This document shows, piece after piece, positions 1 to 37,289 of a stretch of 64,000 nt of DNA (positions are counted from its first letter, which is position 1; every line of letters begins with the position of its first letter). This DNA is from Octopus sinensis. Lineage: Eukaryota. The notes below the pieces were generated by a model, which saw only the letters and a list, made by a program, of their open reading frames with translations, was not told the DNA's origin and ran no database searches. Made by a program: the position numbers and the translations under genes. Location: NCBI RefSeq assembly GCF_006345805.1, contig NC_043026.1, positions 10,168,001-10,232,000 on the forward strand, written 5' to 3'.

Positions 1-463
1 CTGTATAAGCATTTTTAGAGAGTTACTTCCCTTATAAATTCGGGCTTTCTTAGCCATTTTTGTTTTGGTGTCTTCAAGCCATGAAGTCGTTGTTCTAAAA
101 GAACGCTGGTTTCCTTCACAACGCATTACGACGTTGATTTCTTTACACTCCCTTCCCCCACAGCTTCACGAGGGAGGGAAGGGGGAGAAGCAAACAGGTG
201 CAGCTGTGAGCGTGGACGCCAACTCCGCCGCCATCGACACACGATGCATTTTATGCATTAAAATGGAATAAAAAATGATGTTAAATTATTTTTAAAATCG
301 TAGACTCATCGTTGACGCGCGCTAATAGTCAGACGGGCTTGATATGAATCACGACTATAAGATACCCGAATTTGGTTAAACTGCACCGCAAAATGTGGGA
401 GGAGTTAGGAATCTAAATCGAAGGGGACAGACACTCACACAACTAGAGTTTTATATATATAGA
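1..463 (-). mobile_element. Non-autonomous Helitron (family H1), partial at window edge
   Basis: Same element as 6374-6880; 5'-TC end at 463. Confidence 0.75.
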
Positions 464-733
464 TGTATTTTATTCAAACATGAACAGGATATTTCTACAA
501 AAACAGAAAGAGAGGGAAAAACATGTCTAGGTAATACCTTATTTTCATAGAATGATTTAAGGCAGATACCACGGATGAGTTAAAATATTTGGGCCAAGCT
601 GGCAATGAATGGACCAATCAAGAGAGAAATAGAAAGGGCATTGTGAGTAGCGACGTATAACAACATCCGAGACGATGATCAATACAGCCAGGTATAAATA
701 CTCACACAAACACAGAAAGACCTCCTAACAGCA

Positions 734-1124
734 GGTGGCGAACTGGCAGAATCGTTAGCACGGCCGGCGAAATGCTTAGCGGTATTTCGTCTGTCGAGGT
801 CGACTTTGCCTTTCATCCTTTCGGGGTCGATTAAATAAGTACCAGTGTACCACTGGGGTCGATATAATCGACTTAATCCGTTTGTCTGTCCTTGTTTGTC
901 TTCTCTGTGTTTAGCCCCTTGTGGGTAGTAAAGAAATAGGTATTTCGTCTGTCGTTACGTTCTGAGTTCAAATTCCGCCGAGGTCGACTTTGCCTTTCAT
1001 CCTTTCGGGGTCGATAAATTAAGTACCAGTTACGCACTGAGGTCGAAGCAATCGACTTAATACCTATGTCTGTCTTTGTTTGTCCCCTCTGTGTTTAGCC
1101 CCTTGTGGATAATAAAGAAATAGG
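734..1124 (+). mobile_element. tRNA-derived SINE (family A) with tandemly duplicated body
   Basis: Head GGTGGCGAACTGGCAGAATCGTTAG, followed by two copies of the GAGGTCGACTTTGCCTTTCATCCTTTCGGGGTCGAT...AAAGAAATAGG body. Confidence 0.7.
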
Positions 1125-1188
1125 TATACTGTTGATTAAAGGGAGGTAAAGCAGAGCAGGTGCCCTCAGTATTTTGGTGAAAGGGTTA

Positions 1189-1363
1189 GGCATGCGCATT
1201 GAGCGTACTTCTTACTTCATGTTCATATCTGGTTTGAATGTCCTGGGCTTTGATTTCTCTTAATCAACTGATTAATACGCTAATAATACTTATAATTCAT
1301 TTTCCAACTACCAGATAGATATATATATAACAATTCTATCCTTTGTGAAACATTTCCGTAAGT
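1189..1363 (+). promoter_or_regulatory. Putative promoter motif (GGCATGCGCA, NRF1-like) + non-coding exon 1 + donor TTCC|GTAAGT at 1358; repeated in every array unit (e.g. 7605-7779)
   Basis: Homologous block with the same motif and donor lies upstream of genes C, D and E. The NRF1 consensus is YGCGCAYGCGCR. Confidence 0.6.
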
Positions 1364-1889
1364 ATTAAACAAGGAAAATATTCGTTGTTTTTGATTCTGT
1401 AGACTTTCGGTTTTTCGCGCGTCGATTCTTTGAGTCTGATTTGTGCGGGATTTGGCTGCTATTTCTAGCGGAGAAAGCTATCTCGTACAATCTCCTTCGT
1501 TGCCAGGTCAGTTTGTAGTGTTTTAGTTTGAGAAATAGTCTGGAATACACTCCAACCACTGAAATGGTCAGAAAGCGGCATAACTACAGATGTGTACCCC
1601 ATTGACTTTGTTGGCGGATAACTTTGAGAAAAAGGGATACTTTTAAACGAAATTTTCAAAATATATCGCTTAAATGCTGTATATTCAGAATATGTAGGGA
1701 TTTATGGGAACGAATTTTCCCCCCTAATAACTTTCAGAAAAACGGGAATCTTTTAATGAAAGTTTATACCTTCGGAACGGCATGGATTACGATTATATGA
1801 AGAACTTTCTGGGGAAATTGTTTTCCAAGCGATGGGGACAAGAGTATCTGATCAAGAAAAACACATGTTGGGATTTCCTAGATCATATG

Positions 1890-2625
1890 AGCTTCATTTA
1901 TTTCAAGCTAATGCATGTCCTTGGCAGTCACCGCCCATGTTTCTCTGCCATGTAGCATAGCTGTTCGCACACACGTGTCATACACTCTACCTTTCACTCT
2001 GAGTGAGAGGCCCTTTGTTACCGGCAGAGACAGGAGCTCTCTGAACTTTGCCGAGGCTATTCTTATTCTAGCAGCTACGCTCTCAGAGCACCCACCCTAA
2101 CTGCTAAATTTGTCACCAAGGTAATGGAAGCTATTAGCTACTTCTAGTTTTTCCTCCTGGCTTGTGATGGAGGCTGTTCTCTGCTCATTTTCAGTGTTTA
2201 TTGCCCCTGTGCATCTGCCACACACAATAACTATCTTCCCAGTTAACCTTCTTTTGATATTACTGCACCACTTATGTATCGAAAGCTTACACTGGGTACA
2301 TCTTATGGAGTTTCTGCCTGCACCTTTCCTACACATCGAGCAGGGCCATCTACCTGAAGGGATTTGTGATTTGTCTGCCTTCCTACTTACTAAGACTTTG
2401 GCTTTTGCTAGGTTGACTCTAAGGCCCTTCGATTCTAGATCTTGCTTTCACACCTGAAACTTCTACAGTGGTACTTCTGGGAGTGACTCAGCTATTGGAG
2501 CAAGGTCATCAGCACAAAGGATCTCTCAGGGGCAGCCTGTCTTGAATTCCTATGTTATTTCCTGGAAGACTATGATAAATAAGAGGTGGCTGAGGACTGA
2601 TCCTTGGTGGACCCCTACTCCTACC
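1890..2625 (-). mobile_element. Degenerate RTE-clade LINE reverse-transcriptase fragment (intronic)
   Basis: Minus strand encodes GVHQGSVLS.LLF, CADDL, a Cys/His insert and FHYLGD, with stops. Homologous to 42480-42940. Confidence 0.8.
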
Positions 2626-3254
2626 CAGTATAGTGATGATTTATTTACATATCTTGAGCATGCACAGCAACACAAATTATGAGATTGGGAATAACTATTC
2701 ACGAATCTCGTTTCGTGCATCAATAACTCTTCTGTTTTCTCATAAATGTTATTATTTTCATCTTACATAAAATACTTGTACAGTTTCCCTGTTATATTAA
2801 ATATCTGTACATTTCTGTATTGGAAACATTTCTTATATTACATTCATTGTTTGCATGGAATCCTGGGATGTCACTTGTTGTCACTCCAGGTTTCAATCAC
2901 AGAACACTTTCATGTTTTTGGGGGCAATTTACTTTCACTATTTTATAAGACTAAACTACATGTTAACCCAATTCTCTTTCCCCTTTTCACTTGAAAATGC
3001 AACATAACTTTCTTTTCAACCTGTTTCCATTTTTATCCAGAGACAAAAAAAACTAAACGAATCTTCAATCATTAGTAGAACTATGAAATTTACCCTGAAA
3101 TTAAGATTACAGGGTGAACAGAAAATCATGGATATAAAATGATGTGATGTTAAATTTAATAAATCCAAATATTCTGTTGTTAAGGGAAATGTTTATTTCT
3201 ACAGTTTATCTCAATAGAAATGAATCTGTATTTTTTGAGTAGCCTCTACATCTT

Positions 3255-3615
3255 ACACTGTTGTTTCTATCTGATTTCAGGACATCAGATGACATTGACA
3301 TAACGGAAGGAACATCCTCAATATCTACCATGTTTTAAGGAATAAAGGAAATTATTATACAAGACAGATGTATAGCATTGTTTCTAGAAATCTGTGGAAG
3401 AATTCCTGTGAAACATTTCTGAACATCACTGACTGAAGCATGAAGAAGAGTGGTTCCTGTTCTGATGAAACTTGGATAAATTTATGTAATTGCTGCTAGA
3501 GAAAGGTAACCCTGGACAGAAATACAGCTGTAGTAGGAGCATTAGTAAGGAATAAAGTGTAAGAAGAAAGCAGGAAAAATATTTAAACTGGGATTTGTGA
3601 GGAAAAAGAGTGGAA
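3255..3615 (+). other. Putative splice acceptor (AG ending 3280) and uORF-rich 5' leader of coding exon 2; repeated in each unit
   Basis: ttgtttctatctgatttcag|GACATC is conserved at 35353 (B), 45444 (C), 51280 (D), 60699 (E) and 63838 (F). Confidence 0.65.
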
Positions 3616-4854
3616 ATGAGTGAGAAAGGTATAGAACTGATTTCCTCTGAACCCATGACGAAAGAGGGAAGGAAATTGTCATACGAGTGTGATGTCTGTA
3701 AAAAGGTCTTTTCCCTAAAATGTAAGCTAATTTCTCACAAACGCATTCATACAAGAGAGAAACCGTTTCATTGTGAGGTCTGTGGTAAATCTTTCACTTA
3801 CAGTAGTTACGTAATTAGACACAAACGTAGTCATACAGGTGAGAAACCATATCGCTGTGATGTCTGTGGTAAATCATTCTCTCGGAGTGGTCATTTAGCT
3901 ACACATATACGTATTCATACAGGTGAGAAACCATATCATTGTGATGTCTGTGGTAACTCATTCTCTGACAGTGGTCACTTAACTGATCACAAACGTATTC
4001 ATACAGGAGAGAAACCGTATCATTGTGATATCTGTGGTAAATCATTCTCTCAGAGGAGTAACCTAACTTCACACAGACGTATTCATATGGGAGAAACACC
4101 ATATCATTGTGATATTTGTGGTAAATCATTCTCTCAAAGTTATTCCTTAACATATCACAAACGTATTCATACAGGGGAGAAGCCATATCACTGTGACATC
4201 TGTGGTAAATCATTCTCTAAAAGTGAACCCTTAAGAAATCACAAGCGTATTCATACAGGAGAGAAGCCATATCGCTGTGACATCTGTGGTAAATCATTCT
4301 CTAACAGTAGTCACTTAACTAGACATAAACGTATTCATACAGGGGAGAAGCCATATCATTGTGATATGTGTGGTAAATCATTCTCTCAAAGTTTTCAATT
4401 TACTTTACATAAACGTGTTCATACAGGAGAGAACCCATATCCTTGTGATATCTGTGGTAAATCATTCTCTGGTAATTCATCGTTAGTTACTCACAAACGT
4501 ATTCATACAGGGGAGAAGCCATTTCAATGTGATATCTGTGGTAAATCATTCTCTCGGAGTACTCACTTAACTAGACATAAGTATACCCATACAGGCGAGA
4601 ACGCATGGAAGTGTGATATCTGTGGTAAATCATTCTCTCAAAATAGTGACTTAAGGATACACATACGTACTCATACAGGAGAGAAACCGTATCATTGTGA
4701 CATCTGTGGAAAGTCATTCTCTGACAATAGTGCCTTGATTTCGCACAAGCGTGTTCATACGAAGGAGAAGCCATATTGCTGTGATGTCTGTGGTAAATCA
4801 TTCTCTAGAAGTGATCATTTAACTAAACACCGTCGTACCCATGGAAAAAAGTGA
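3616..4854 (+). CDS. C2H2 zinc-finger protein, 14 tandem fingers (gene A, copy 1)
   Basis: 14 C-x2-C-x12-H-x3-H repeats with TGEKP-type linkers. The ORF opens at GTG 3610; first ATG is 3616. No KRAB/SCAN/BTB domain is visible. Confidence 0.93.
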
Positions 4855-5520
4855 CTGTATCATTGTGATATCTGGTAAATCATTCTCCAAGAGTGCTTCG
4901 TCAACTACACACATATGTATTCATACTGGAGAGACACTATATCACTATGGTAAATAATTTATTTTCAGTGGGGCCATGATATTGCACAAACAGCACTAGC
5001 AACAGCCACGCCCAAATGTTGTTCTTTTTTACGTGCCACCGGCGCAAGTGCCAGTAAGGCGACACTGGTAACGATCACGCTCAAATGGTGCTTTTTACAA
5101 GGCTTAAATTCCTCACGAGAAATAACTACAAGACCCACACCAGGAATTCCATTCATCTCCCAGCTCAAAGAGGCAAGCCCCACCCTGTGCTTGACTCAAG
5201 GAGAAAAAGCAACCCCCAATATCAGCAGCGGGGCCTAATAGCATTTGCTGGTTTATCCCCACCTTATCATGTGGGTTCCTTACCCTTTTTATTAACATCA
5301 ATTCACTCATCCATCCACAAACACTCTCCAAGCTTTCCTATCATTTATAAACTCTCTTGACTCTCTCACACCATCACTGCTAACCAGCAAAGCTTTCCTC
5401 ACTCCATCCATCCACCCAGACTAAGGTCTGCCTCTGGTTCTGTTGCCTACCACCTCTGTCTTCACCCCACCTTACCATATGCTCCTCATACATGTAGCCA
5501 AACCACCTCAAGATATATGC

Positions 5521-5529
5521 ATATATATA

Positions 5530-5621
<92 letters not shown>

Positions 5622-5650
5622 AACACACATGTATATATATATATATATAT
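5521..5650. repeat. Compound (AT)n/(AC)n microsatellite; length-variable counterparts at ~11937-12073, 18358-18488, 24772-24896, 31184-31307
   Basis: Read directly from the sequence. Confidence 0.95.
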
Positions 5651-6373
5651 AAGTAATTGAGTGATACTACACACTGACTGGTCAGAATACAGTTTGCAAA
5701 ACCTAGTAATCTGGAGCCTACACAGCTGTATTTAAGGCACAGATTTAATCATCTCGCTAAAGTCAAAAGTTGTGAAGCATGACTGTCACCACTACTACGT
5801 GAACCTGAAGATTGCAGAATTTAATGCATGAAAGTACTAATTCAATCACAATGAACATCTAACATTCTATTATTTTATTTTATTTTTTTATATTATATTA
5901 TCTTATATTATATCATTATAAGATTGTAAATAAAACATGAAAACCAGACAAGGTTGGAATTCTTTTCATTAATATATATATATACACATACATATATATA
6001 TATAAATATATATATTAACCCATGCTAGCATGGAAAACGGACGTTAAACGACGGTGATGAGGAGGAGGATTATATATATATATATATACATACATACACA
6101 AACACATATTTCAAGTGCCCTATATATCTTATTTACTGATCTGACAACCCTAGTTTTGACCCATCTGCAACCAGAAAAAGGTTAAGAGGTCAATTCCTTC
6201 TCATTCACTGCCAGGTGCTGAGAGAAGAGAACAATATACCATTAATTTGATTGAGAATTAATAAAAACGTGGATTCGGTTTCAAATACGCTATGCTATAC
6301 TGTAGCTGTTCGCTACCCATTCATACAATCACGTAATCATAAGTATACGAACATGTGTAGTTTGTATAAAATA

Positions 6374-6880
6374 CTAGCAGTATCGCCCGGCGTTGCTCGG
6401 GTTTGTAAGGGAAATAACTGTATAAGCATTTTTAGAGAGTTACTTCCCTTATAAATTCGGGCTTTCTTAGCCATTTTTGTTTTGGTGTCTTCAAGCCATG
6501 AAGTCGTTGTTCTAAAAGAACGCTGGTTTCCTTCACAACGCATTACGACGTTGATTTCTTTACACTCCCTTCCCCCACAGCTTCACGAGGGAGGGAAGGG
6601 GGAGAAGCAAACAGGTGCAGCTGTGAGCGTGGACGCCAACTCCGCCGCCATCGACACACGATGCATTTTATGCATTAAAATGGAATAAAAAATGATGTTA
6701 AATTATTTTTAAAATCGTAGACTCATCGTTGACGCGCGCTAATAGTCAGACGGGCTTGATATGAATCACGACTATAAGATACCCGAATTTGGTTAAACTG
6801 CACCGCAAAATGTGGGAGGAGTTAGGAATCTAAATCGAAGGGGACAGACACTCACACAACTAGAGTTTTATATATATAGA
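6374..6880 (-). mobile_element. Non-autonomous Helitron (family H1)
   Basis: Minus strand reads A|TCTATATATA...CCCGAGCAACGCCGGG hairpin...CTAG|T: 5'-TC, 3'-CTAG, subterminal hairpin, A^T target, no TSD. Confidence 0.8.
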
Positions 6881-7150
6881 TGTATTTTATTCAAACATGA
6901 ACAGGATATTTCTACAAAAACAGAAAGAGAGGGAAAAACATGTCTAGGTAATACCTTATTTTCATAGAATGATTTAAGGCAGATACCACGGATGAGTTAA
7001 AATATTTGGGCCAAGCTGGCAATGAATGGACCAATCAAGAGAGAAATAGAAAGGGCATTGTGAGTAGCGACGTATAACAACATCCGAGACGATGATCAAT
7101 ACAGCCAGGTATAAATACTCACACAAACACAGAAAGACCTCCTAACAGCA

Positions 7151-7540
7151 GGTGGCGAACTGGCAGAATCGTTAGCACGGCCGGCGAAATGCTTAGCGGT
7201 ATTTCGTCTGTCGAGGTCGACTTTGCCTTTCATCCTTTCGGGGTCGATTAAATAAGTACCAGTGTACCACTGGGGTCGATATAATCGACTTAATCCGTTT
7301 GTCTGTCCTTGTTTGTCTTCTCTGTGTTTAGCCCTTGTGGGTAGTAAAGAAATAGGTATTTCGTCTGTCGTTACGTTCTGAGTTCAAATTCCGCCGAGGT
7401 CGACTTTGCCTTTCATCCTTTCGGGGTCGATAAATTAAGTACCAGTTACGCACTGAGGTCGAAGCAATCGACTTAATACCTATGTCTGTCTTTGTTTGTC
7501 CCCTCTGTGTTTAGCCCCTTGTGGATAATAAAGAAATAGG
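7151..7540 (+). mobile_element. SINE family A (array copy)
   Basis: Copy of 734-1124. Confidence 0.7.
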
Positions 7541-8305
7541 TATACTGTTGATTAAAGGGAGGTAAAGCAGAGCAGGTGCCCTCAGTATTTTGGTGAAAGG
7601 GTTAGGCATGCGCATTGAGCGTACTTCTTACTTCATGTTCATATCTGGTTTGAATGTCCTGGGCTTTGATTTCTCTTAATCAACTGATTAATACGCTAAT
7701 AATACTTATAATTCATTTTCCAACTACCAGATAGATATATATATAACAATTCTATCCTTTGTGAAACATTTCCGTAAGTATTAAACAAGGAAAATATTCG
7801 TTGTTTTTGATTCTGTAGACTTTCGGTTTTTCGCGCGTCGATTCTTTGAGTCTGATTTGTGCGGGATTTGGCTGCTATTTCTAGCGGAGAAAGCTATCTC
7901 GTACAATCTCCTTCGTTGCCAGGTCAGTTTGTAGTGTTTTAGTTTGAGAAATAGTCTGGAATACACTCCAACCACTGAAATGGTCAGAAAGCGGCATAAC
8001 TACAGATGTGTACCCCATTGACTTTGTTGGCGGATAACTTTGAGAAAAAGGGATACTTTTAAACGAAATTTTCAAAATATATCGCTTAAATGCTGTATAT
8101 TCAGAATATGTAGGGATTTATGGGAACGAATTTTCCCCCCTAATAACTTTCAGAAAAACGGGAATCTTTTAATGAAAGTTTATACCTTCGGAACGGCATG
8201 GATTACGATTATATGAAGAACTTTCTGGGGAAATTGTTTTCCAAGCGATGGGGACAAGAGTATCTGATCAAGAAAAACACATGTTGGGATTTCCTAGATC
8301 ATATG

Positions 8306-10031: not shown

Positions 10032-11270
10032 ATGAGTGAGAAAGGTATAGAACTGATTTCCTCTGAACCCATGACGAAAGAGGGAAGGAAATTGTCATAC
10101 GAGTGTGATGTCTGTAAAAAGGTCTTTTCCCTAAAATGTAAGCTAATTTCTCACAAACGCATTCATACAAGAGAGAAACCGTTTCATTGTGAGGTCTGTG
10201 GTAAATCTTTCACTTACAGTAGTTACGTAATTAGACACAAACGTAGTCATACAGGTGAGAAACCATATCGCTGTGATGTCTGTGGTAAATCATTCTCTCG
10301 GAGTGGTCATTTAGCTACACATATACGTATTCATACAGGTGAGAAACCATATCATTGTGATGTCTGTGGTAACTCATTCTCTGACAGTGGTCACTTAACT
10401 GATCACAAACGTATTCATACAGGAGAGAAACCGTATCATTGTGATATCTGTGGTAAATCATTCTCTCAGAGGAGTAACCTAACTTCACACAGACGTATTC
10501 ATATGGGAGAAACACCATATCATTGTGATATTTGTGGTAAATCATTCTCTCAAAGTTATTCCTTAACATATCACAAACGTATTCATACAGGGGAGAAGCC
10601 ATATCACTGTGACATCTGTGGTAAATCATTCTCTAAAAGTGAACCCTTAAGAAATCACAAGCGTATTCATACAGGAGAGAAGCCATATCGCTGTGACATC
10701 TGTGGTAAATCATTCTCTAACAGTAGTCACTTAACTAGACATAAACGTATTCATACAGGGGAGAAGCCATATCATTGTGATATGTGTGGTAAATCATTCT
10801 CTCAAAGTTTTCAATTTACTTTACATAAACGTGTTCATACAGGAGAGAACCCATATCCTTGTGATATCTGTGGTAAATCATTCTCTGGTAATTCATCGTT
10901 AGTTACTCACAAACGTATTCATACAGGGGAGAAGCCATTTCAATGTGATATCTGTGGTAAATCATTCTCTCGGAGTACTCACTTAACTAGACATAAGTAT
11001 ACCCATACAGGCGAGAACGCATGGAAGTGTGATATCTGTGGTAAATCATTCTCTCAAAATAGTGACTTAAGGATACACATACGTACTCATACAGGAGAGA
11101 AACCGTATCATTGTGACATCTGTGGAAAGTCATTCTCTGACAATAGTGCCTTGATTTCGCACAAGCGTGTTCATACGAAGGAGAAGCCATATTGCTGTGA
11201 TGTCTGTGGTAAATCATTCTCTAGAAGTGATCATTTAACTAAACACCGTCGTACCCATGGAAAAAAGTGA
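10032..11270 (+). CDS. C2H2 zinc-finger protein, 14 fingers (gene A, copy 2)
   Basis: Translation identical to copy 1 in the ORF track. Confidence 0.93.
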
Positions 11271-11943: not shown

Positions 11944-12040
<97 letters not shown>

Positions 12041-16452: not shown

Positions 16453-17691
16453 ATGAGTGAGAAAGGTATAGAACTGATTTCCTCTGAACCCATGACGAAA
16501 GAGGGAAGGAAATTGTCATACGAGTGTGATGTCTGTAAAAAGGTCTTTTCCCTAAAATGTAAGCTAATTTCTCACAAACGCATTCATACAAGAGAGAAAC
16601 CGTTTCATTGTGAGGTCTGTGGTAAATCTTTCACTTACAGTAGTTACGTAATTAGACACAAACGTAGTCATACAGGTGAGAAACCATATCGCTGTGATGT
16701 CTGTGGTAAATCATTCTCTCGGAGTGGTCATTTAGCTACACATATACGTATTCATACAGGTGAGAAACCATATCATTGTGATGTCTGTGGTAACTCATTC
16801 TCTGACAGTGGTCACTTAACTGATCACAAACGTATTCATACAGGAGAGAAACCGTATCATTGTGATATCTGTGGTAAATCATTCTCTCAGAGGAGTAACC
16901 TAACTTCACACAGACGTATTCATATGGGAGAAACACCATATCATTGTGATATTTGTGGTAAATCATTCTCTCAAAGTTATTCCTTAACATATCACAAACG
17001 TATTCATACAGGGGAGAAGCCATATCACTGTGACATCTGTGGTAAATCATTCTCTAAAAGTGAACCCTTAAGAAATCACAAGCGTATTCATACAGGAGAG
17101 AAGCCATATCGCTGTGACATCTGTGGTAAATCATTCTCTAACAGTAGTCACTTAACTAGACATAAACGTATTCATACAGGGGAGAAGCCATATCATTGTG
17201 ATATGTGTGGTAAATCATTCTCTCAAAGTTTTCAATTTACTTTACATAAACGTGTTCATACAGGAGAGAACCCATATCCTTGTGATATCTGTGGTAAATC
17301 ATTCTCTGGTAATTCATCGTTAGTTACTCACAAACGTATTCATACAGGGGAGAAGCCATTTCAATGTGATATCTGTGGTAAATCATTCTCTCGGAGTACT
17401 CACTTAACTAGACATAAGTATACCCATACAGGCGAGAACGCATGGAAGTGTGATATCTGTGGTAAATCATTCTCTCAAAATAGTGACTTAAGGATACACA
17501 TACGTACTCATACAGGAGAGAAACCGTATCATTGTGACATCTGTGGAAAGTCATTCTCTGACAATAGTGCCTTGATTTCGCACAAGCGTGTTCATACGAA
17601 GGAGAAGCCATATTGCTGTGATGTCTGTGGTAAATCATTCTCTAGAAGTGATCATTTAACTAAACACCGTCGTACCCATGGAAAAAAGTGA
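16453..17691 (+). CDS. C2H2 zinc-finger protein, 14 fingers (gene A, copy 3)
   Basis: Translation identical to copy 1. Confidence 0.93.
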
Positions 17692-18354: not shown

Positions 18355-18460
<106 letters not shown>

Positions 18461-22866: not shown

Positions 22867-24105
22867 ATGAGTGAGAAAGGTATAGAACTGATTTCCTCTG
22901 AACCCATGACGAAAGAGGGAAGGAAATTGTCATACGAGTGTGATGTCTGTAAAAAGGTCTTTTCCCTAAAATGTAAGCTAATTTCTCACAAACGCATTCA
23001 TACAAGAGAGAAACCGTTTCATTGTGAGGTCTGTGGTAAATCTTTCACTTACAGTAGTTACGTAATTAGACACAAACGTAGTCATACAGGTGAGAAACCA
23101 TATCGCTGTGATGTCTGTGGTAAATCATTCTCTCGGAGTGGTCATTTAGCTACACATATACGTATTCATACAGGTGAGAAACCATATCATTGTGATGTCT
23201 GTGGTAACTCATTCTCTGACAGTGGTCACTTAACTGATCACAAACGTATTCATACAGGAGAGAAACCGTATCATTGTGATATCTGTGGTAAATCATTCTC
23301 TCAGAGGAGTAACCTAACTTCACACAGACGTATTCATATGGGAGAAACACCATATCATTGTGATATTTGTGGTAAATCATTCTCTCAAAGTTATTCCTTA
23401 ACATATCACAAACGTATTCATACAGGGGAGAAGCCATATCACTGTGACATCTGTGGTAAATCATTCTCTAAAAGTGAACCCTTAAGAAATCACAAGCGTA
23501 TTCATACAGGAGAGAAGCCATATCGCTGTGACATCTGTGGTAAATCATTCTCTAACAGTAGTCACTTAACTAGACATAAACGTATTCATACAGGGGAGAA
23601 GCCATATCATTGTGATATGTGTGGTAAATCATTCTCTCAAAGTTTTCAATTTACTTTACATAAACGTGTTCATACAGGAGAGAACCCATATCCTTGTGAT
23701 ATCTGTGGTAAATCATTCTCTGGTAATTCATCGTTAGTTACTCACAAACGTATTCATACAGGGGAGAAGCCATTTCAATGTGATATCTGTGGTAAATCAT
23801 TCTCTCGGAGTACTCACTTAACTAGACATAAGTATACCCATACAGGCGAGAACGCATGGAAGTGTGATATCTGTGGTAAATCATTCTCTCAAAATAGTGA
23901 CTTAAGGATACACATACGTACTCATACAGGAGAGAAACCGTATCATTGTGACATCTGTGGAAAGTCATTCTCTGACAATAGTGCCTTGATTTCGCACAAG
24001 CGTGTTCATACGAAGGAGAAGCCATATTGCTGTGATGTCTGTGGTAAATCATTCTCTAGAAGTGATCATTTAACTAAACACCGTCGTACCCATGGAAAAA
24101 AGTGA
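22867..24105 (+). CDS. C2H2 zinc-finger protein, 14 fingers (gene A, copy 4)
   Basis: Translation identical to copy 1. Confidence 0.93.
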
Positions 24106-24778: not shown

Positions 24779-24865
<87 letters not shown>

Positions 24866-26395: not shown

Positions 26396-26787
26396 GGTGG
26401 CGAACTGGCAGAATCGTTAGCACGGCCGGCGAAATGCTTAGCGGTATTTCGTCTGTCGAGGTCGACTTTGCCTTTCATCCTTTCGGGGTCGATTAAATAA
26501 GTACCAGTTATGCACTGGAGGTCGATATAATCGACTTAATCCGTTTGTCTGTCCTTGTTTGTCTTCTCTGTGTTTAGCCCCTTGTGGGTAGTAAAGAAAT
26601 AGGTATTTCGTCTGTCGTTACGTTCTGAGTTCAAATTCCGCCGAGGTCGACTTTGCCTTTCATCCTTTCGGGGTCGATAAATTAAGTACCAGTTACGCAC
26701 TGAGGTCGAAGCAATCGACTTAATACCTATGTCTGTCTTTGTTTGTCCCCTCTGTGTTTAGCCCCTTGTGGATAATAAAGAAATAGG
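26396..26787 (+). mobile_element. SINE family A (array copy)
   Basis: Copy of 734-1124. Confidence 0.7.
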
Positions 26788-27552: not shown

Positions 27553-28288
27553 AGCTTCATTTCTTTCAAGCTAATGCATGTCCTTGGCAGTCACCGCCCA
27601 TGTTTCTCTGCCATGTAGCATAGCTGTTCGCACACACGTGTCATACACTCTACCTTTCACTCTGAGTGAGAGGCCCTTTGTTACCGGCAGAGACAGGAGC
27701 TCTCTGAACTTTGCCGAGGCTATTCTTATTCTAGCAGCTACGCTCTCAGAGCACCCACCCTAACTGCTAAATTTGTCACCAAGGTAATGGAAGCTATTAG
27801 CTACTTCTAGTTTTTCCTCCTGGCTTGTGATGGAGGCTGTTCTCTGCTCATTTTCAGTGTTTATTGCCCCTGTGCATCTGCCACACACAATAACTATCTT
27901 CCCAGTTAACCTTCTTTTGATATTACTGCACCACTTATGTATCGAAAGCTTACACTGGGTACATCTTATGGAGTTTCTGCCTGCACCTTTCCTACACATC
28001 GAGCAGGGCCATCTACCTGAAGGGATTTGTGATTTGTCTGCCTTCCTACTTACTAAGACTTTGGCTTTTGCTAGGTTGACTCTAAGGCCCTTCGATTCTA
28101 GATCTTGCTTTCACACCTGAAACTTCTACAGTGGTACTTCTGGGAGTGACTCAGCTATTGGAGCAAGGTCATCAGCACAAAGGATCTCTCAGGGGCAGCC
28201 TGTCTTGAATTCCTATGTTATTTCCTGGAAGACTATGATAAATAAGAGGTGGCTGAGGACTGATCCTTGGTGGACCCCTACTCCTACC
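27553..28288 (-). mobile_element. RTE RT fragment (array copy)
   Basis: Copy of 1890-2625. Confidence 0.8.
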
Positions 28289-29278
28289 CAGTATAGTGAT
28301 GATTTATTTACATATCTTGAGCATGCACAGCAACACAAATTATGAGATTGGGAATAACTATTCACGAATCTCGTTTCGTGCATCAATAACTCTTCTGTTT
28401 TCTCATAAATGTTATTATTTTCATCTTACATAAAATACTTGTACAGTTTCCCTGTTATATTAAATATCTGTACATTTCTGTATTGGAAACATTTCTTATA
28501 TTACATTCATTGTTTGCATGGAATCCTGGGATGTCACTTGTTGTCACTCCAGGTTTCAATCACAGAACACTTTCATGTTTTTGGGGGCAATTTACTTTCA
28601 CTATTTTATAAGACTAAACTACATGTTAACCCAATTCTCTTTCCCCTTTTCACTTGAAAATGCAACATAACTTTCTTTTCAACCTGTTTCCATTTTTATC
28701 CAGAGACAAAAAAAACTAAACGAATCTTCAATCATTAGTAGAACTATGAAATTTACCCTGAAATTAAGATTACAGGGTGAACAGAAAATCATGGATATAA
28801 AATGATGTGATGTTAAATTTAATAAATCCAAATATTCTGTTGTTAAGGGAAATGTTTATTTCTACAGTTTATCTCAATAGAAATGAATCTGTATTTTTTG
28901 AGTAGCCTCTACATCTTACACTGTTGTTTCTATCTGATTTCAGGACATCAGATGACATTGACATAACGGAAGGAACATCCTCAATATCTACCATGTTTTA
29001 AGGAATAAAGGAAATTATTATACAAGACAGATGTATAGCATTGTTTCTAGAAATCTGTGGAAGAATTCCTGTGAAACATTTCTGAACATCACTGACTGAA
29101 GCATGAAGAAGAGTGGTTCCTGTTCTGATGAAACTTGGATAAATTTATGTAATTGCTGCTAGAGAAAGGTAACCCTGGACAGAAATACAGCTGTAGTAGG
29201 AGCATTAGTAAGGAATAAAGTGTAAGAAGAAAGCAGGAAAAATATTTAAACTGGGATTTGTGAGGAAAAAGAGTGGAA

Positions 29279-30517
29279 ATGAGTGAGAAAGGTATAGAAC
29301 TGATTTCCTCTGAACCCATGACGAAAGAGGGAAGGAAATTGTCATACGAGTGTGATGTCTGTAAAAAGGTCTTTTCCCTAAAATGTAAGCTAATTTCTCA
29401 CAAACGCATTCATACAAGAGAGAAACCGTTTCATTGTGAGGTCTGTGGTAAATCTTTCACTTACAGTAGTTACGTAATTAGACACAAACGTAGTCATACA
29501 GGTGAGAAACCATATCGCTGTGATGTCTGTGGTAAATCATTCTCTCGGAGTGGTCATTTAGCTACACATATACGTATTCATACAGGTGAGAAACCATATC
29601 ATTGTGATGTCTGTGGTAACTCATTCTCTGACAGTGGTCACTTAACTGATCACAAACGTATTCATACAGGAGAGAAACCGTATCATTGTGATATCTGTGG
29701 TAAATCATTCTCTCAGAGGAGTAACCTAACTTCACACAGACGTATTCATATGGGAGAAACACCATATCATTGTGATATTTGTGGTAAATCATTCTCTCAA
29801 AGTTATTCCTTAACATATCACAAACGTATTCATACAGGGGAGAAGCCATATCACTGTGACATCTGTGGTAAATCATTCTCTAAAAGTGAACCCTTAAGAA
29901 ATCACAAGCGTATTCATACAGGAGAGAAGCCATATCGCTGTGACATCTGTGGTAAATCATTCTCTAACAGTAGTCACTTAACTAGACATAAACGTATTCA
30001 TACAGGGGAGAAGCCATATCATTGTGATATGTGTGGTAAATCATTCTCTCAAAGTTTTCAATTTACTTTACATAAACGTGTTCATACAGGAGAGAACCCA
30101 TATCCTTGTGATATCTGTGGTAAATCATTCTCTGGTAATTCATCGTTAGTTACTCACAAACGTATTCATACAGGGGAGAAGCCATTTCAATGTGATATCT
30201 GTGGTAAATCATTCTCTCGGAGTACTCACTTAACTAGACATAAGTATACCCATACAGGCGAGAACGCATGGAAGTGTGATATCTGTGGTAAATCATTCTC
30301 TCAAAATAGTGACTTAAGGATACACATACGTACTCATACAGGAGAGAAACCGTATCATTGTGACATCTGTGGAAAGTCATTCTCTGACAATAGTGCCTTG
30401 ATTTCGCACAAGCGTGTTCATACGAAGGAGAAGCCATATTGCTGTGATGTCTGTGGTAAATCATTCTCTAGAAGTGATCATTTAACTAAACACCGTCGTA
30501 CCCATGGAAAAAAGTGA
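29279..30517 (+). CDS. C2H2 zinc-finger protein, 14 fingers (gene A, copy 5)
   Basis: Translation identical to copy 1. Confidence 0.93.
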
Positions 30518-31194
30518 CTGTATCATTGTGATATCTGGTAAATCATTCTCCAAGAGTGCTTCGTCAACTACACACATATGTATTCATACTGGAGAGACAC
30601 TATATCACTATGGTAAATAATTTATTTTCAGTGGGGCCATGATATTGCACAAACAGCACTAGCAACAGCCACGCCCAAATGTTGTTCTTTTTTACGTGCC
30701 ACCGGCGCAAGTGCCAGTAAGGCGACACTGGTAACGATCACGCTCAAATGGTGCTTTTTACAAGGCTTAAATTCCTCACGAGAAATAACTACAAGACCCA
30801 CACCAGGAATTCCATTCATCTCCCAGCTCAAAGAGGCAAGCCCCACCCTGTGCTTGACTCAAGGAGAAAAAGCAACCCCCAATATCAGCAGCGGGGCCTA
30901 ATAGCATTTGCTGGTTTATCCCCACCTTATCATGTGGGTTCCTTACCCTTTTTATTAACATCAATTCACTCATCCATCCACAAACACTCTCCAAGCTTTC
31001 CTATCATTTATAAACTCTCTTGACTCTCTCACACCATCACTGCTAACCAGCAAAGCTTTCCTCACTCCATCCATCCACCCAGACTAAGGTCTGCCTCTGG
31101 TTCTGTTGCCTACCACCTCTGTCTTCACCCCACCTTACCATATGCTCCTCATACATGTAGCCAAACCACCTCAAGATATATGCATATATATATA

Positions 31195-31268
<74 letters not shown>

Positions 31269-32031
31269 CACACAAACACACATGTATATATATATATATA
31301 ATATATAAGTAATTGAGTGATACTACACACTGACTGGTCAGAATACAGTTTGCAAAACCTAGTAATCTGGAGCCTACACAGCTGTATTTAAGGCACAGAT
31401 TTAATCATCTCGCTAAAGTCAAAAGTTGTGAAGCATGACTGTCACCACTACTACGTGAACCTGAAGATTGCAGAATTTAATGCATGAAAGTACTAATTCA
31501 ATCACAATGAACATCTAACATTCTATTATTTTATTTTATTTTTTTATATTATATTATCTTATATTATATCATTATAAGATTGTAAATAAAACATGAAAAC
31601 CAGACAAGGTTGGAATTCTTTTCATTAATATATATATATACACATACATATATATATATAAATATATATATTAACCCATGCTAGCATGGAAAACGGACGT
31701 TAAACGACGGTGATGAGGAGGAGGATTATATATATATATATATATACATACATACACAAACACATATTTCAAGTGCCCTATATATCTTATTTACTGATCT
31801 GACAACCCTAGTTTTGACCCATCTGCAACCAGAAAAAGGTTAAGAGGTCAATTCCTTCTCATTCACTGCCAGGTGCTGAGAGAAGAGAACAATATACCAT
31901 TAATTTGATTGAGAATTAATAAAAACGTGGATTCGGTTTCAAATACGCTATGCTATACTGTAGCTGTTCGCTACCCATTCATACAATCACGTAATCATAA
32001 GTATACGAACATGTGTAGTTTGTATAAAATA

Positions 32032-32537
32032 CTAGCAGTATCGCCCGGCGTTGCTCGGGTTTGTAAGGGAAATAACTGTATAAGCATTTTTAGAGAGTTA
32101 CTTCCCTTATAAATTCGGGCTTTCTTAGCCATTTTTGTTTTGGTGTCTTCAAGCCATGAAGTCGTTGTTCTAAAAGAACGCTGGTTTCCTTCACAACGCA
32201 TTACGACGTTGATTTCTTTACACTCCCTTCCCCCACAGCTTCACGAGGGAGGGAAGGGGGAGAAGCAAACAGGTGCAGCTGTGAGCGTGGACGCCAACTC
32301 CGCCGCCATCGACACACGATGCATTTTATGCATTAAAATGGAATAAAAAATGATGTTAAATTATTTTTAAAATCGTAGACTCATCGTTGACGCGCGCTAA
32401 TAGTCAGACGGGCTTGATATGAATCACGACTATAAGATACCCGAATTTGTTAAACTGCACCGCAAAATGTGGGAGGAGTTAGGAATCTAAATCGAAGGGG
32501 ACAGACACTCACACAACTAGAGTTTTATATATATAGA
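32032..32537 (-). mobile_element. Non-autonomous Helitron H1 (array copy)
   Basis: Copy of 6374-6880. Confidence 0.8.
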
Positions 32538-32807
32538 TGTATTTTATTCAAACATGAACAGGATATTTCTACAAAAACAGAAAGAGAGGGAAAAACATGT
32601 CTAGGTAATACCTTATTTTCATAGAATGATTTAAGGCAGATACCACGGATGAGTTAAAATATTTGGGCCAAGCTGGCAATGAATGGACCAATCAAGAGAG
32701 AAATAGAAAGGGCATTGTGAGTAGCGACGTATAACAACATCCGAGACGATGATCAATACAGCCAGGTATAAATACTCACACAAACACAGAAAGACCTCCT
32801 AACAGCA

Positions 32808-33198
32808 GGTGGCGAACTGGCAGAATCGTTAGCACGGCCGGCGAAATGCTTAGCGGTATTTCGTCTGTCGAGGTCGACTTTGCCTTTCATCCTTTCGGGG
32901 TCGATTAAATAAGTACCAGTGTACCACTGGGGTCGATATAATCGACTTAATCCGTTTGTCTGTCCTTGTTTGTCTTCTCTGTGTTTAGCTCCTTGTGGGT
33001 AGTAAAGAAATAGGTATTTCGTCTGTCGTTACGTTCTGAGTTCAAATTCCGCCGAGGTCGACTTTGCCTTTCATCCTTTCGGGGTCGATAAATTAAGTAC
33101 CAGTTACGCACTGAGGTCGAAGCAATCGACTTAATACCTATGTCTGTCTTTGTTTGTCCCCTCTGTGTTTAGCCCCTTGTGGATAATAAAGAAATAGG
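32808..33198 (+). mobile_element. SINE family A (array copy)
   Basis: Copy of 734-1124. Confidence 0.7.
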
Positions 33199-33963
33199 TA
33201 TACTGTTGATTAAAGGGAGGTAAAGCAGAGCAGGTGCCCTCAGTATTTTGGTGAAAGGGTTAGGCATGCGCATTGAGCGTACTTCTTACTTCATGTTCAT
33301 ATCTGGTTTGAATGTCCTGGGCTTTGATTTCTCTTAATCAACTGATTAATACGCTAATAATACTTATAATTCATTTTCCAACTACCAGATAGATATATAT
33401 ATAACAATTCTATCCTTTGTGAAACATTTCCGTAAGTATTAAACAAGGAAAATATTCGTTGTTTTTGATTCTGTAGACTTTCGGTTTTTCGCGCGTCGAT
33501 TCTTTGAGTCTGATTTGTGCGGGATTTGGCTGCTATTTCTAGCGGAGAAAGCTATCTCGTACAATCTCCTTCGTTGCCAGGTCAGTTTGTAGTGTTTTAG
33601 TTTGAGAAATAGTCTGGAATACACTCCAACCACTGAAATGGTCAGAAAGCGGCATAACTACAGATGTGTACCCCATTGACTTTGTTGGCGGATAACTTTG
33701 AGAAAAAGGGATACTTTTAAACGAAATTTTCAAAATATATCGCTTAAATGCTGTATATTCAGAATATGTAGGGATTTATGGGAACGAATTTTCCCCCCTA
33801 ATAACTTTCAGAAAAACGGGAATCTTTTAATGAAAGTTTATACCTTCGGAACGGCATGGATTACGATTATATGAAGAACTTTCTGGGGAAATTGTTTTCC
33901 AAGCGATGGGGACAAGAGTATCTGATCAAGAAAAACACATGTTGGGATTTCCTAGATCATATG

Positions 33964-34699
33964 AGCTTCATTTATTTCAAGCTAATGCATGTCCTTGGCA
34001 GTCACCGCCCATGTTTCTCTGCCATGTAGCATAGCTGTTCGCACACACGTGTCATACACTCTACCTTTCACTCTGAGTGAGAGGCCCTTTGTTACCGGCA
34101 GAGACAGGAGCTCTCTGAACTTTGCCGAGGCTATTCTTATTCTAGCAGCTACGCTCTCAGAGCACCCACCCTAACTGCTAAATTTGTCACCAAGGTAATG
34201 GAAGCTATTAGCTACTTCTAGTTTTTCCTCCTGGCTTGTGATGGAGGCTGTTCTCTGCTCATTTTCAGTGTTTATTGCCCCTGTGCATCTGCCACACACA
34301 ATAACTATCTTCCCAGTTAACCTTCTTTTGATATTACTGCACCACTTATGTATCGAAAGCTTACACTGGGTACATCTTATGGAGTTTCTGCCTGCACCTT
34401 TCCTACACATCGAGCAGGGCCATCTACCTGAAGGGATTTGTGATTTGTCTGCCTTCCTACTTACTAAGACTTTGGCTTTTGCTAGGTTGACTCTAAGGCC
34501 CTTCGATTCTAGATCTTGCTTTCACACCTGAAACTTCTACAGTGGTACTTCTGGGAGTGACTCAGCTATTGGAGCAAGGTCATCAGCACAAAGGATCTCT
34601 CAGGGGCAGCCTGTCTTGAATTCCTATGTTATTTCCTGGAAGACTATGATAAATAAGAGGTGGCTGAGGACTGATCCTTGGTGGACCCCTACTCCTACC
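33964..34699 (-). mobile_element. RTE RT fragment (array copy)
   Basis: Copy of 1890-2625. Confidence 0.8.
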
Positions 34700-35682
34700 C
34701 AGTATAGTGATGATTTATTTACATATCTTGAGCATGCACAGCAACACAAATTATGAGATTGGGAATAACTATTCACGAATCTCGTTTCGTGCATCAATAA
34801 CTCTTCTGTTTTCTCATAAATGTTATTATTTTCATCTTACATAAAATACTTGTACAGTTTCCCTGTTATATTAAATATCTGTACATTTCTGTATTGGAAA
34901 CATTTCTTATATTACATTCATTGTTTGCATGGAATCCTGGGATGTCACTTGTTGTCACTCCAGGTTTCAATCACAGAACACTTTCATGTTTTTGGGGGCA
35001 ATTTACTTTCACTATTTTATAAGACTAAACTACATGTTAACCCAATTCTCTTTCCCCTTTTCACTTGAAAATGCAACATAACTTTCTTTTCAACCTGTTT
35101 CCATTTTTATCCAGAGACAAAAAAAACTAAACGAATCTTCAATCATTAGTAGAACTATGAAATTTACCCTGAAATTAAGATTACAGGGTGAACAGAAAAT
35201 CATGGTATAAAATGATGTGATGTTAAATTTAATAAATCCAAATATTCTGTTGTTAAGGGAAATGTTTATTTCTACAGTTTATCGCAATAGAAATGAATCT
35301 GTATTTTTTGAGTAGCCTCTACATCTTACACTGTTGTTTCTATCTGATTTCAGGACATCAGATGACATTGACATAACAGAAACAACATCCTCAATATCTG
35401 CCATGTTTTAAGGAATAAAGGAAATTATTATACAAGACAGATGTATAGCATTGTTTCTAGAAATCTGTGGAAGAATTCCTGTGAAACATTTCTGAACATC
35501 ACTGACTGAAGCATGAAGAAGAGTGGTTCCTGTTCTGATGAAACTTGGATAAATTTATGTAATTGCTGCTAGAGAAAGGTAACCCTGGACAGAAATACAG
35601 CTGTAGTAGGAGCATTAGTAAGGAATAAAGTGTAAGAAGAAAGCAGGAAAAATATTTAAACTGGGGTTTGTGAGGAAAAAGA

Positions 35683-37154: not shown

Positions 37155-37160
37155 ATCTAC

Positions 37161-37195
<35 letters not shown>

Positions 37196-37240: not shown

Positions 37241-37289
<49 letters not shown>

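What the first reader, a model, noticed from the sequence alone, without database searches (positions are those of the whole stretch)
1..35200. A whole zinc-finger transcription-factor gene amplified as a near-identical 6.4-kb macrosatellite
Seen: at least 5 complete, protein-identical copies of a 14-finger gene, each with its own promoter module, intron and TE cargo, head-to-tail and differing mainly in microsatellite length. Established: coleoid cephalopods have very large clustered C2H2 expansions, and gene-bearing macrosatellites (e.g. D4Z4/DUX4) show copy-number variation and array-level silencing. Inference: this is a ZNF cluster caught at the birth step, with gene dosage as a likely polymorphic trait.
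Basis: partly seen in the sequence, partly recalled or inferred. Interest (0 to 1): 0.82.

Follow-up and report, generated by a model that had tools for sequence, protein, structure and literature searches.

The report
Young tandem array of octopus zinc-finger gene
An octopus zinc-finger gene cluster contains one complete gene repeated at least five times head-to-tail in almost identical 6.4-kb copies, an ordinary but clean example of how such gene families grow by unequal recombination between neighbouring copies.

Summary
Window 1 to about 35,208 holds at least 5.5 head-to-tail units of 6,410-6,421 bp, and the array runs off the left edge. Each unit carries an identical, intact 412-aa, 14-finger C2H2 ORF. 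Each also has a conserved upstream promoter-like module, a putative 1.77-kb intron with an antisense LINE fragment, and other repeats. Outside microsatellites and homopolymers, four of the five full units (and the partial unit at the window's left edge) differ by 0-1 substitutions in 5.8 kb.

TE-protein similarity places the window in an octopod. The "birth of a cluster" reading is only partly right. The array sits in an established cluster with older paralogs: B (10 fingers, dS 0.048 to the array gene), C, D and E.

The array has the form (spacer + gene module A) x N + spacer + gene module B. Near-identity ends at 35,205, essentially where the ancient paralog-shared gene module begins (35,209). 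So the repeat period equals the A-to-B paralog spacing. This points to unequal crossing-over between two older tandem paralogs, followed by expansion.

Copy number, polymorphism, expression and silencing cannot be tested here. This is a new member of a known kind and of moderate interest.

The parts
1..35208 (+). High-identity tandem array, at least 5.5 units of 6,410-6,421 bp. It is open at the window's left edge. Structure: (spacer S + gene module A) repeated.
   Evidence: 99.7-100% identity between units. No variable column among the six copies from 33,975 to 35,204.
3136..4992 (+). Gene module A, copy 1: the last ~145 bp of the intron, exon 2 with its 5'UTR, the ORF and a decayed 15th finger. 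Further copies lie at 9552-11408, 15973-17829, 22387-24243 and 28799-30655. This is the only part of the unit shared with all older paralogs.
   Evidence: Homology to C starts at 3136, to D at 3173 and to E at 3187. Homology to B ends at 4992/36729.
3616..4854 (+). ORF of array gene A, copy 1: 412 aa with 14 C2H2 fingers and TGEKP-type linkers. The ancestral start codon position (3610) is GTG, and a new ATG lies two codons downstream.
   Evidence: (Pfam zf-C2H2, 14 stretches, no KRAB/SCAN/BTB).
10032..11270 (+). ORF of gene A, copy 2, identical to copy 1.
16453..17691 (+). ORF of gene A, copy 3, identical.
22867..24105 (+). ORF of gene A, copy 4, identical.
29279..30517 (+). ORF of gene A, copy 5, identical.
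1180..1506 (+). Promoter-like module plus putative non-coding exon 1. Landmarks are a GCATGCGC palindrome at 1190, CAGCTG, a TATATAA box at about 1321, ATTTCCGTAAGT, and GATTTGGCTGCTATTTCTAGC at 1449. A CAG|GTCAGT donor follows, with the intron starting at 1507. Copies lie at 7596-7922, 14018-14344, 20434-20758, 26843-27169 and 33254-33580.
   Evidence: the module is conserved upstream of paralogs C, D and E. One search gives the coordinates. CpG o/e is 1.07. The exon boundaries are inferred, with no RNA evidence.
1507..3280 (+). Putative intron (1,774 bp) ending in the acceptor TTTCAG|G, with exon 2 starting at 3281. The acceptor recurs in every unit, so that exon 2 starts at 9697, 16118, 22532, 28944 and 35354.
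   Evidence: the acceptor and polypyrimidine tract are conserved in A, C, D, E and F..
1881..2234 (-). LINE reverse-transcriptase C-terminal fragment, antisense, inside the putative intron. The same fragment lies at 8297-8650 and in the later units.
   Evidence: tblastn of the RT tail, aa 1-111, 64% identity, E = 1e-44; 78% nucleotide identity to 42497-42940.
795..1127 (+). 184-bp tandem dimer (1.8 copies, 89% identity) upstream of the promoter module, repeated in every unit. It was called a SINE at first sight, but its class is unverified.
   Evidence: No tRNA gene and no Rfam match. No other copy in the non-array part of the window.
4993..6110 (+). Start of spacer S. It holds fragments of an interspersed repeat family with 63-66-bp internal repeats (4993-5098, 6017-6070) and TA/CA microsatellites (5510-5657, 5968-6015, 6071-6109). 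These microsatellites carry most of the variation between units. AATAAA signals lie at 5929 and 6260.
35209..36729 (+). Terminal gene module B, an older paralog that ends the array. Its ORF (35683-36588) encodes 301 aa with 10 fingers and keeps the ancestral ATG. Its fingers correspond to A fingers 1, 2, 3/4, 5, 6, 9, 10, (11/)12, 13 and 14.
   Evidence: There are 16 differences in 760 bp from 35,075 on, all at or after 35,205. Matched fingers are 89-99% identical, and dS is 0.048.

Best explanation
This is a real, very young tandem gene array inside an older octopod C2H2 zinc-finger cluster.

Shown: the array reads (spacer S + gene module A) x at least 5, then one more S, then the diverged gene module B, then unique flank. 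S is about 4.56 kb and holds repeats, microsatellites, the promoter-like module, putative exon 1 and most of the intron. All six S copies are essentially identical. The A modules are identical to each other. B differs from A by about 2% in the 5'UTR, about 4.5% in matched fingers and four whole-finger indels.

Shown: the switch from identity to divergence falls at 35,205. Within 5 bp of this point, the gene module shared by all paralogs begins (unit coordinate 3136, equal to 35,209). So the period of the young array equals the spacing of two older tandem paralogs.

Inferred mechanism: misaligned pairing of module B with module A on sister chromatids or homologues, with a crossover at the extreme 5' end of the module, gave A-S-A-S-B. 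The resulting 6.4-kb perfect repeats then expanded quickly by further unequal exchange.

Inferred function: each unit is a self-contained gene encoding a Krueppel-type, sequence-specific DNA-binding protein. It has a short acidic N-terminal motif and no KRAB, SCAN or BTB domain. Amplification therefore multiplies the dose of one binding specificity rather than creating new ones. Diversification would come later, as seen between A and B, where changes concentrate at DNA-contact residues and in finger number.
For: Tandem structure and identity. ORF identity and finger count. Boundary: no variable column among the six copies from 33,975 to 35,204; differences private to the terminal copy start at 35,205; A-C, A-D and A-E homology starts at 3136, 3173 and 3187.

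The array ends at 36,729, where homology to the unit (4992) stops. B maps finger by finger onto A, with in-frame losses or gains of whole fingers.

A versus B: dS 0.048, dN 0.047. At contact positions -1, 2, 3 and 6 there are 10 nonsynonymous and 0 synonymous changes in 40 codons, against pN 0.031 at other positions. Fisher's test gives p = 0.004.

Multi-base unit-specific variants define at least three distinguishable unit types, which argues against a simple single-copy artefact. They are the 10-bp CATACATGTA indel shared by units 1-3 but absent from units 4-5, and the 5-7 substitutions of unit 4.

The promoter-like module and acceptor are conserved across paralogs, and CpG is undepleted at the promoters. 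Precedents: tandem duplication and clustering of octopod C2H2 genes (PMC9795677; PMC12513265), and nearly identical (>98%) ~40-kb segments in a mouse KZFP cluster (PMC5363842).
Against: No reads, depth data or second assembly were available, so copy number is unverified. Most differences between units 0, 1, 2, 3 and 5 are of the kind long-read consensus errors produce (microsatellite length, 1-bp indels), so few true paralog-specific variants anchor the copies.

The left end of the array lies outside the window, so the predicted original A promoter and left breakpoint cannot be checked. A crossover at the very 5' edge of the module is required and is a mild coincidence. Continuous unequal exchange in an older array, with the edge copy escaping, would leave a similar picture.

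Exon structure, expression and protein function are inferred from sequence only. No identical gene product is on record, and no protein sharing the N-terminal region was retrievable from the public protein collections.
Confidence: 0.62

Rival explanations
1. An old tandem array is kept homogeneous by concerted evolution, through continuing unequal exchange and/or gene conversion. The last gene module (B) escapes only because it sits at the array edge. On this view the array is not newly born; only the coalescence of its units is recent.
For: Edge copies of tandem arrays are expected to stay unhomogenised, because crossovers never replace the most distal segment (established population-genetic reasoning). 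B is about 2-5% diverged while everything proximal is identical. The A/B tandem arrangement is clearly much older than the coalescence of the units.
Against: Identity is uninterrupted across entire 6.4-kb units, including TE debris and intron sequence (0-1 substitutions per 5.8 kb). Patchy identity would be expected from short conversion tracts. The identity boundary coincides with the start of the ancient gene module, which edge escape does not predict. The data cannot formally separate a recent origin from recent turnover.
Confidence: 0.2
2. The copy number is an assembly artefact. The true locus has fewer units, for example 2-3 per haplotype, and the assembler over-expanded the array or concatenated two haplotypes in series.
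For: Units are nearly indistinguishable. Many differences are 1-bp indels or microsatellite-length changes typical of consensus error. The 35-kb array exceeds the span of ordinary long reads. No independent record of the gene product exists.
Against: A unit-to-unit junction cannot be produced from a single-copy locus, so at least a duplication must exist. At least three unit types are distinguished by multi-base variants (the 10-bp indel and the unit-4 substitutions). Haplotype false duplications usually give two copies, not five or more in perfect phase. The array joins cleanly to a unique flank through paralog B.
Confidence: 0.15
3. The array was produced by a mobile-element or rolling-circle process, such as Helitron-like capture or re-integration of a circular 6.4-kb DNA as a concatemer, rather than by homologous unequal exchange.
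For: The unit is full of repeat debris. A repeat-family member sits exactly at the 3' end of the gene module, both in the units and beside B.
Against: The period equals the spacing of two pre-existing paralogs, and the array ends in phase with paralog B. A concatemer insertion would not produce this. No terminal repeats, transposase or Rep/helicase ORF is present in the unit. No other copy of the unit lies elsewhere in the window.
Confidence: 0.03

Closest known systems
Recent segmental and tandem amplifications within vertebrate poly-ZNF clusters, for example mouse KZFP clusters (PMC5363842) and zebrafish chromosome-4 FiNZ-ZNFs (PMC10547256)
   Same: These are clustered Krueppel-type poly-zinc-finger genes that grow by local duplication. 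Young copies are nearly identical. Later divergence concentrates in DNA-contact residues and in finger number. TE-rich surroundings are shared. A short acidic N-terminal motif replaces a large effector domain, as FiNZ does in cyprinids.
   Different: There is no KRAB or FiNZ domain. The host is an octopod. The duplicated unit is small (6.4 kb, exactly one gene) and strictly periodic with at least 5 copies, rather than a few large multi-gene segments.
Cephalopod lineage-specific C2H2 ZNF expansions (PMC12513265; PMC9795677; Albertin et al. 2015, Nature 524:220, cited from those papers)
   Same: Same gene superfamily, same clade, and the same clustered, tandem-duplication mode. The window's older paralogs B-E fit that picture.
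   Different: Published dating puts the bulk of the octopod expansion at about 41 Ma (PMC9795677). The units here are effectively undiverged (at most about 2e-4), so this is ongoing rather than ancient expansion. I found no paper that describes such a near-identical array in a cephalopod.
Gene-bearing human macrosatellites such as D4Z4/DUX4 (PMC3018141, PMC4063668; D4Z4 details from my own knowledge)
   Same: Kilobase-scale head-to-tail units, very high identity between units, and a transcription-factor ORF in every unit. Copy-number variation is expected.
   Different: Only 5.5 or more copies are seen, against tens to hundreds. The sequence is AT-rich (38% GC) and not a CpG-rich block. Each unit carries its own promoter-like module, intron and AATAAA signals, whereas in D4Z4 only the last unit is polyadenylated. 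No evidence exists for polymorphism or array-level silencing. The origin is traceable to two ordinary paralogs.

Membership tests
C2H2 (Krueppel-type) poly-zinc-finger transcription factor | Tandem C-X2-C-X12-H-X3-H fingers joined by TGEKP-like linkers | tested here: met
   Regular expression finds 14 fingers. Pfam zf-C2H2 has E = 2.8e-88 with 14 stretches, and zf-H2C2_2 has E = 4.9e-121.
KRAB-/SCAN-/BTB-ZNF subfamilies | N-terminal KRAB (PF01352), SCAN (PF02023) or BTB effector domain | tested here: not met
   Pfam reports only finger families for A, B, C and E. The N-terminus is a ~24-aa motif, (M)SEK-IELIS-EPM-KE. An effector domain encoded on a separate, unseen coding exon cannot be excluded without RNA data.
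Macrosatellite (gene-bearing, D4Z4 type) | Head-to-tail units of kilobase size with very high identity between units | tested here: met
   Units of 6,410-6,421 bp at 99.7-100% identity.
Macrosatellite (gene-bearing, D4Z4 type) | Large copy number (tens or more) | tested here: inconclusive
   At least 5.5 units are in the window, and the array continues beyond the left edge.
Macrosatellite (gene-bearing, D4Z4 type) | Copy-number polymorphism among individuals | not testable with these tools
   Only a single assembly window is available, with no reads or population data.
Macrosatellite (gene-bearing, D4Z4 type) | Array-level heterochromatin or DNA-methylation silencing | not testable with these tools
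   There is only an indirect proxy. CpG o/e is about 1.1 over 6191-8190 including the promoter, against 0.1-0.6 elsewhere. This argues against long-term germline methylation of the promoter. Because the units are so young, it reflects the ancestor rather than the array.
Tandem duplicates generated by non-allelic homologous recombination between paralogs | Repeat period equals the spacing of pre-existing homologous segments, and the identity boundary lies at the edge of that homology | tested here: met
   The identity-to-divergence switch is at 35,205. The paralog-shared module starts at 35,209 (unit 3136). The array ends in phase with paralog B at 36,729.
Tandem duplicates generated by non-allelic homologous recombination between paralogs | The proximal (left) boundary lies at the homologous position, with the original upstream sequence of the first copy | not testable with these tools
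   The left end of the array lies outside the window.

The most novel reading that the evidence does not exclude
The array may be an actively expanding, copy-number-polymorphic dosage locus. In this reading, an octopod population is currently amplifying one zinc-finger binding specificity, for example against a newly active transposon. This dose-first stage would precede the diversification seen in older cluster members. If so, it would give a natural system for watching ZNF family growth in real time outside vertebrates.
Probability: 0.2. Interest if true: 0.55.

Novelty: new member of a known kind. Interest (0 to 1): 0.35.

Why it matters
Cephalopod C2H2 expansions are usually discussed as ancient bursts dated to tens of millions of years ago. 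This locus shows the process still operating, and its anatomy records the mechanism. A 6.4-kb period is inherited from two older tandem paralogs. The identity boundary lies at the edge of the shared gene module. The neighbouring older copy has already changed finger number and DNA-contact residues.

If the copy number is real and variable, the locus offers a tractable marker for gene-dosage variation of a transcription factor in octopus. It also gives a clean dose-versus-diversification comparison (A x N against B). For genome builders, it is a region where copy number should be validated before ZNF genes are counted.

Tried and rejected
1. A full-length protein search was saturated by vertebrate KRAB/SCAN ZNFs with more fingers. 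It gave no cephalopod hit and no organism information.
2. An N-terminus-only word search found no candidate at all.
3. The exhaustive profile search with the N-terminal alignment was swamped by generic poly-ZNFs. No listed best-scoring stretch starts before profile position 11, and nearly all start at positions 17-27. It says nothing about the motif's distribution.
4. Exact-product look-ups for A (ATG and GTG starts), B, C and E found nothing on record. Orthologous loci, other assemblies and read-derived contigs could therefore not be retrieved.
5. Rfam (gathering threshold on the whole window; permissive threshold on 650-1200) and ARAGORN found nothing. I dropped the 'SINE' label for the 184-bp dimer.
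6. The Albertin 2015 paper is not held in the library, and the substitution rate used for published dating could not be retrieved. Absolute ages are therefore given only under an explicit assumed rate.
7. I first read the sixth copy as uniformly 90% diverged. That was rejected. It is near-identical in matched parts and lacks four fingers.
8. Helitron or concatemer origin was considered and rejected, because the array is in phase with paralog B.
9. The bacterial promoter/terminator scanner and the phage, plasmid and E. coli collections were not used, as they are irrelevant to an animal genome.


Full report
OBSERVATION. Tandem Repeats Finder shows the 84-bp zinc-finger periodicity recurring at 3736, 10152, 16573, 22987 and 29399, each time with the same score. 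A shorter array follows at 35809, and three more lie further right. A self-BLAST with a 6,416-bp query (3001-9416) gives contiguous + strand matches at 1-3000, 9417-15837, 15838-22251, 22252-28663 and 28664-35074, with 99.70-99.97% identity. The window therefore holds five full units and a 3-kb partial unit that runs off the left edge.

A MAFFT alignment of the units has 41 variable columns in 20 groups. Nearly all lie in TA/CA microsatellites (5510-5657, 5968-6109, 7733) or are single-base indels. After masking microsatellites and homopolymers, only 10 variable columns remain. Units 0, 1, 2, 3 and 5 then differ pairwise by 0-1 substitutions in about 5,800 bp. Unit 4 differs from the others by 5-7 substitutions, four of them in one 4-bp patch. 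The stop-to-stop open frame at 3601-4851 (coding ORF 3616-4854) has 14 fingers and is identical in all five copies.

ORGANISM. The ZNF proteins could not be used for placement. A LINE reverse-transcriptase tail at 42163-42819 (-) has its best named relatives in Octopus vulgaris (87% over the aligned part) and O. bimaculoides (63-76%). The window is therefore from an octopod, and the species is not determined. No identical gene product is on record in the public gene-position collection.

ANATOMY OF THE UNIT. Coordinates refer to the first instance of each feature.
- An upstream module of about 300 bp (1180-1506) is conserved upstream of paralog C (47930-47650, -) and of paralog E (63310-62980 and 62700-62500, -). 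A further copy lies at 48060-48300 (+), placed to serve gene D. The module contains a GCATGCGC palindrome, CAGCTG, a TATATAA box and ATTTCCGTAAGT.
- A CAG|GTCAGT donor lies at 1506|1507.
- A strong acceptor, TGTTGTTTCTATCTGATTTCAG|G, lies at 3280|3281 and is conserved in A, C, D, E and a remnant F. An invariant GGTA at 3505-3508 may mark a further small intron.
- The putative 1.77-kb intron carries an antisense LINE fragment at 1881-2234. RT residues 1-111 match at 64% identity with E = 1e-44.
- The ORF (3616-4854) encodes 412 aa. It has a ~22-aa N-terminal motif shared with B, C and E, then 14 fingers. Pfam finds no KRAB, SCAN or BTB domain.
- At the ancestral start position, B, C and E have ATG but the array gene has GTG. 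An AAG-to-ATG change two codons downstream supplies a new start.
- A frameshifted relic of a 15th finger follows the stop codon.
- The remaining ~4.56 kb is spacer. It holds members of an interspersed repeat family with 63-66-bp internal repeats, microsatellites, another interspersed repeat (6361-6881, also at 62047-62443) and a 184-bp dimer of unknown class.
- CpG observed/expected is about 1.1 across 6191-8190, which includes the promoter module, and 0.1-0.6 elsewhere. The promoter modules of C/D and E show 1.24 and 1.15.

All exon assignments are inferences from conservation. No transcript evidence was available.

RIGHT EDGE AND ORIGIN. The sixth copy is not uniformly diverged. From 33,975 to 35,204 there is no variable column among the six copies. 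From 35,205 on, the terminal copy carries private differences at 35205, 35284, 35378, 35382, 35383, 35400, 35666, 35683 and 35690. That is 16 differences in the 760 bp from 35,075 on, all at or after 35,205.

Independently, homology between the unit and the older paralogs begins at unit coordinate 3136 for C, 3173 for D and 3187 for E. Unit coordinate 3136 corresponds to 35,209 in the terminal copy. Homology between the unit and the terminal copy stops at 4992/36,729, after which the flanks differ.

The locus therefore reads (S + A) x N + S + B, where the gene module (1.86 kb in A, 1.52 kb in B) is the ancient duplicon. The young array's period equals the A-to-B spacing, and near-identity ends at the 5' edge of module B.

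The most economical explanation is unequal crossing-over between modules A and B of misaligned chromatids, close to the module's 5' end. This would produce A-S-A-S-B, and further unequal exchange between the new perfect repeats would expand it. This is an inference. The left end, where the model predicts the original upstream sequence of A, is outside the window.

A VERSUS B. B's ten fingers match A's fingers 1, 2, 3/4 (a hybrid), 5, 6, 9, 10, (11/)12, 13 and 14 at 89-99% nucleotide identity. The two genes therefore differ by four in-frame whole-finger indels. Nei-Gojobori estimates over 301 aligned codons give dS 0.048, dN 0.047 and dN/dS 0.96.

All 10 changes in the 40 codons for contact positions -1, 2, 3 and 6 are nonsynonymous (pN 0.103). 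The other finger positions have pN 0.031 and pS 0.059. Fisher's test for contact versus non-contact gives p = 0.004. Contact N versus all S gives p = 0.13, which is not significant. This is the usual ZNF pattern of relaxed or diversifying change at specificity residues.

AGE. Divergence between units outside microsatellites is at most about 1.7e-4 (0-1 substitutions in 5.8 kb). That is roughly 280-fold less than the A-B dS. If I assume 1-5e-9 substitutions per site per year (my assumption, not a measured octopod rate), the units coalesce within roughly the last 20-90 thousand years, and A/B split about 5-24 million years ago. Published dating places the bulk of the octopod C2H2 expansion at about 41 Ma (PMC9795677).

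ARTEFACT QUESTION. Depth and spanning reads cannot be examined here. A unit-to-unit junction cannot arise from a single-copy locus. Multi-base variants define at least three unit types: the 10-bp CATACATGTA indel, present in units 1-3 and absent from units 4-5, and unit 4's substitutions. A tandem array therefore certainly exists.

The exact number of units is weakly anchored. The other differences are of the kind that consensus errors produce. Serial concatenation of two haplotypes cannot be excluded.

COMPARISON WITH KNOWN SYSTEMS. Clustered, tandemly duplicating C2H2 genes are established for cephalopods (PMC12513265; PMC9795677). Nearly identical recent duplicates occur within mouse KZFP clusters (PMC5363842). 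Short acidic N-terminal ZNF-associated motifs are known from cyprinid FiNZ genes (PMC10547256). Gene-bearing macrosatellites are a recognised class in humans (PMC3018141, PMC4063668).

The array meets the structural definition of a macrosatellite: kilobase units, head-to-tail arrangement and near-identity. Polymorphism, large copy number and array-level silencing are untested. Unlike D4Z4 (from my own knowledge), the sequence is AT-rich, and each unit has its own promoter-like module, intron and AATAAA signals. I found no cephalopod paper that uses the term macrosatellite for such a locus.

VERDICT. The locus is a young amplification of one member inside an established octopod ZNF cluster, not the birth of a cluster. 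Its anatomy points to unequal crossing-over between two older tandem paralogs. It is a new member of a known kind and of moderate interest, mainly as a clean mechanistic snapshot and a candidate copy-number-variable transcription-factor locus. No step needed referral.

Noticed in passing
window 45856-47649: A 51-bp minisatellite with 35 copies at 96% identity. Its unit derives from the exon-1-like sequence GATTTGGCTGCTATTTCTAGC of the promoter module (unit 7852-7885). It lies between paralog C's promoter module (47930-47650, -) and its coding exon. Because 51 is a multiple of 3, it produces a spurious 548-aa ORF.
   Followed up: partly
window 47650-48300: Two copies of the promoter-like module lie head-to-head about 130 bp apart: 47930-47650 on the - strand for gene C, and 48060-48300 on the + strand, apparently for gene D. 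This suggests a divergent promoter pair. CpG o/e here is 1.24.
   Followed up: partly
window 43854-45589 (-): Paralog C is a mosaic. Its 5'UTR, N-terminus and finger 1 are 95-96% identical to A and B, and its N-terminal 62 aa are identical to B. Fingers 2-14 are only 74-83% identical to any A finger. This suggests a past recombination or conversion event between inverted paralogs.
   Followed up: partly
window 51165-52917 (+): Paralog D has ACG at the position of the family's start codon and a frame disruption in the first finger. The long ORF begins in a different frame. D may be a pseudogene or N-terminally truncated.
   Followed up: no
window 63785-63932 (-): A truncated copy (F) of the intron-end/exon-2-start segment lies immediately upstream of paralog E's promoter module (63303-63016). 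It may be a remnant of an earlier tandem arrangement on the minus strand.
   Followed up: no
window 36730-37700; also 41726-42009, 54555-54624, 55660-55703, and in the unit 4993-5098 and 6017-6070: An interspersed repeat family with inverted arms around a TA/CA microsatellite and internal 63-66-bp tandem repeats (GGTGCTTTTTACGTGCCACCGGCAC...). A member abuts the 3' end of the gene module both in the array units and beside B, but in opposite orientation.
   Followed up: partly
window 26500-26530 (unit 4; equivalent to 7264-7273 in unit 1): A 4-bp substitution patch plus a 1-bp insertion in the first monomer of the 184-bp dimer makes it resemble the second monomer (GTGTACC to GTTATGC, against GTTACGC). 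It looks like a micro-conversion or a polishing artefact. It accounts for most of unit 4's extra divergence.
   Followed up: partly
window 3610-3618 and equivalents; 35683: All array copies have GTG where B, C and E have the start ATG. A new ATG was created two codons downstream (AAG to ATG), so the start shifted and the protein is 2 aa shorter. Several short upstream ORFs lie in the putative 5'UTR (3281-3615).
   Followed up: partly
window 4855-4945 and 36589-36680: A frameshifted relic of a 15th zinc finger lies directly after the stop codon. It is shared by A and B.
   Followed up: no
window 57547-57886: A 112-bp tandem repeat with 3 copies at 95% identity. It is unrelated to the ZNF genes.
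   Followed up: no
window 6191-8190 and equivalents: A ~2-kb stretch has undepleted CpG (o/e about 1.1) despite only 38-44% GC. It covers the 184-bp dimer, the promoter module and exon 1. The intron, TEs and gene body are CpG-depleted. This is a signature of long-term germline hypomethylation of the promoter region.
   Followed up: partly
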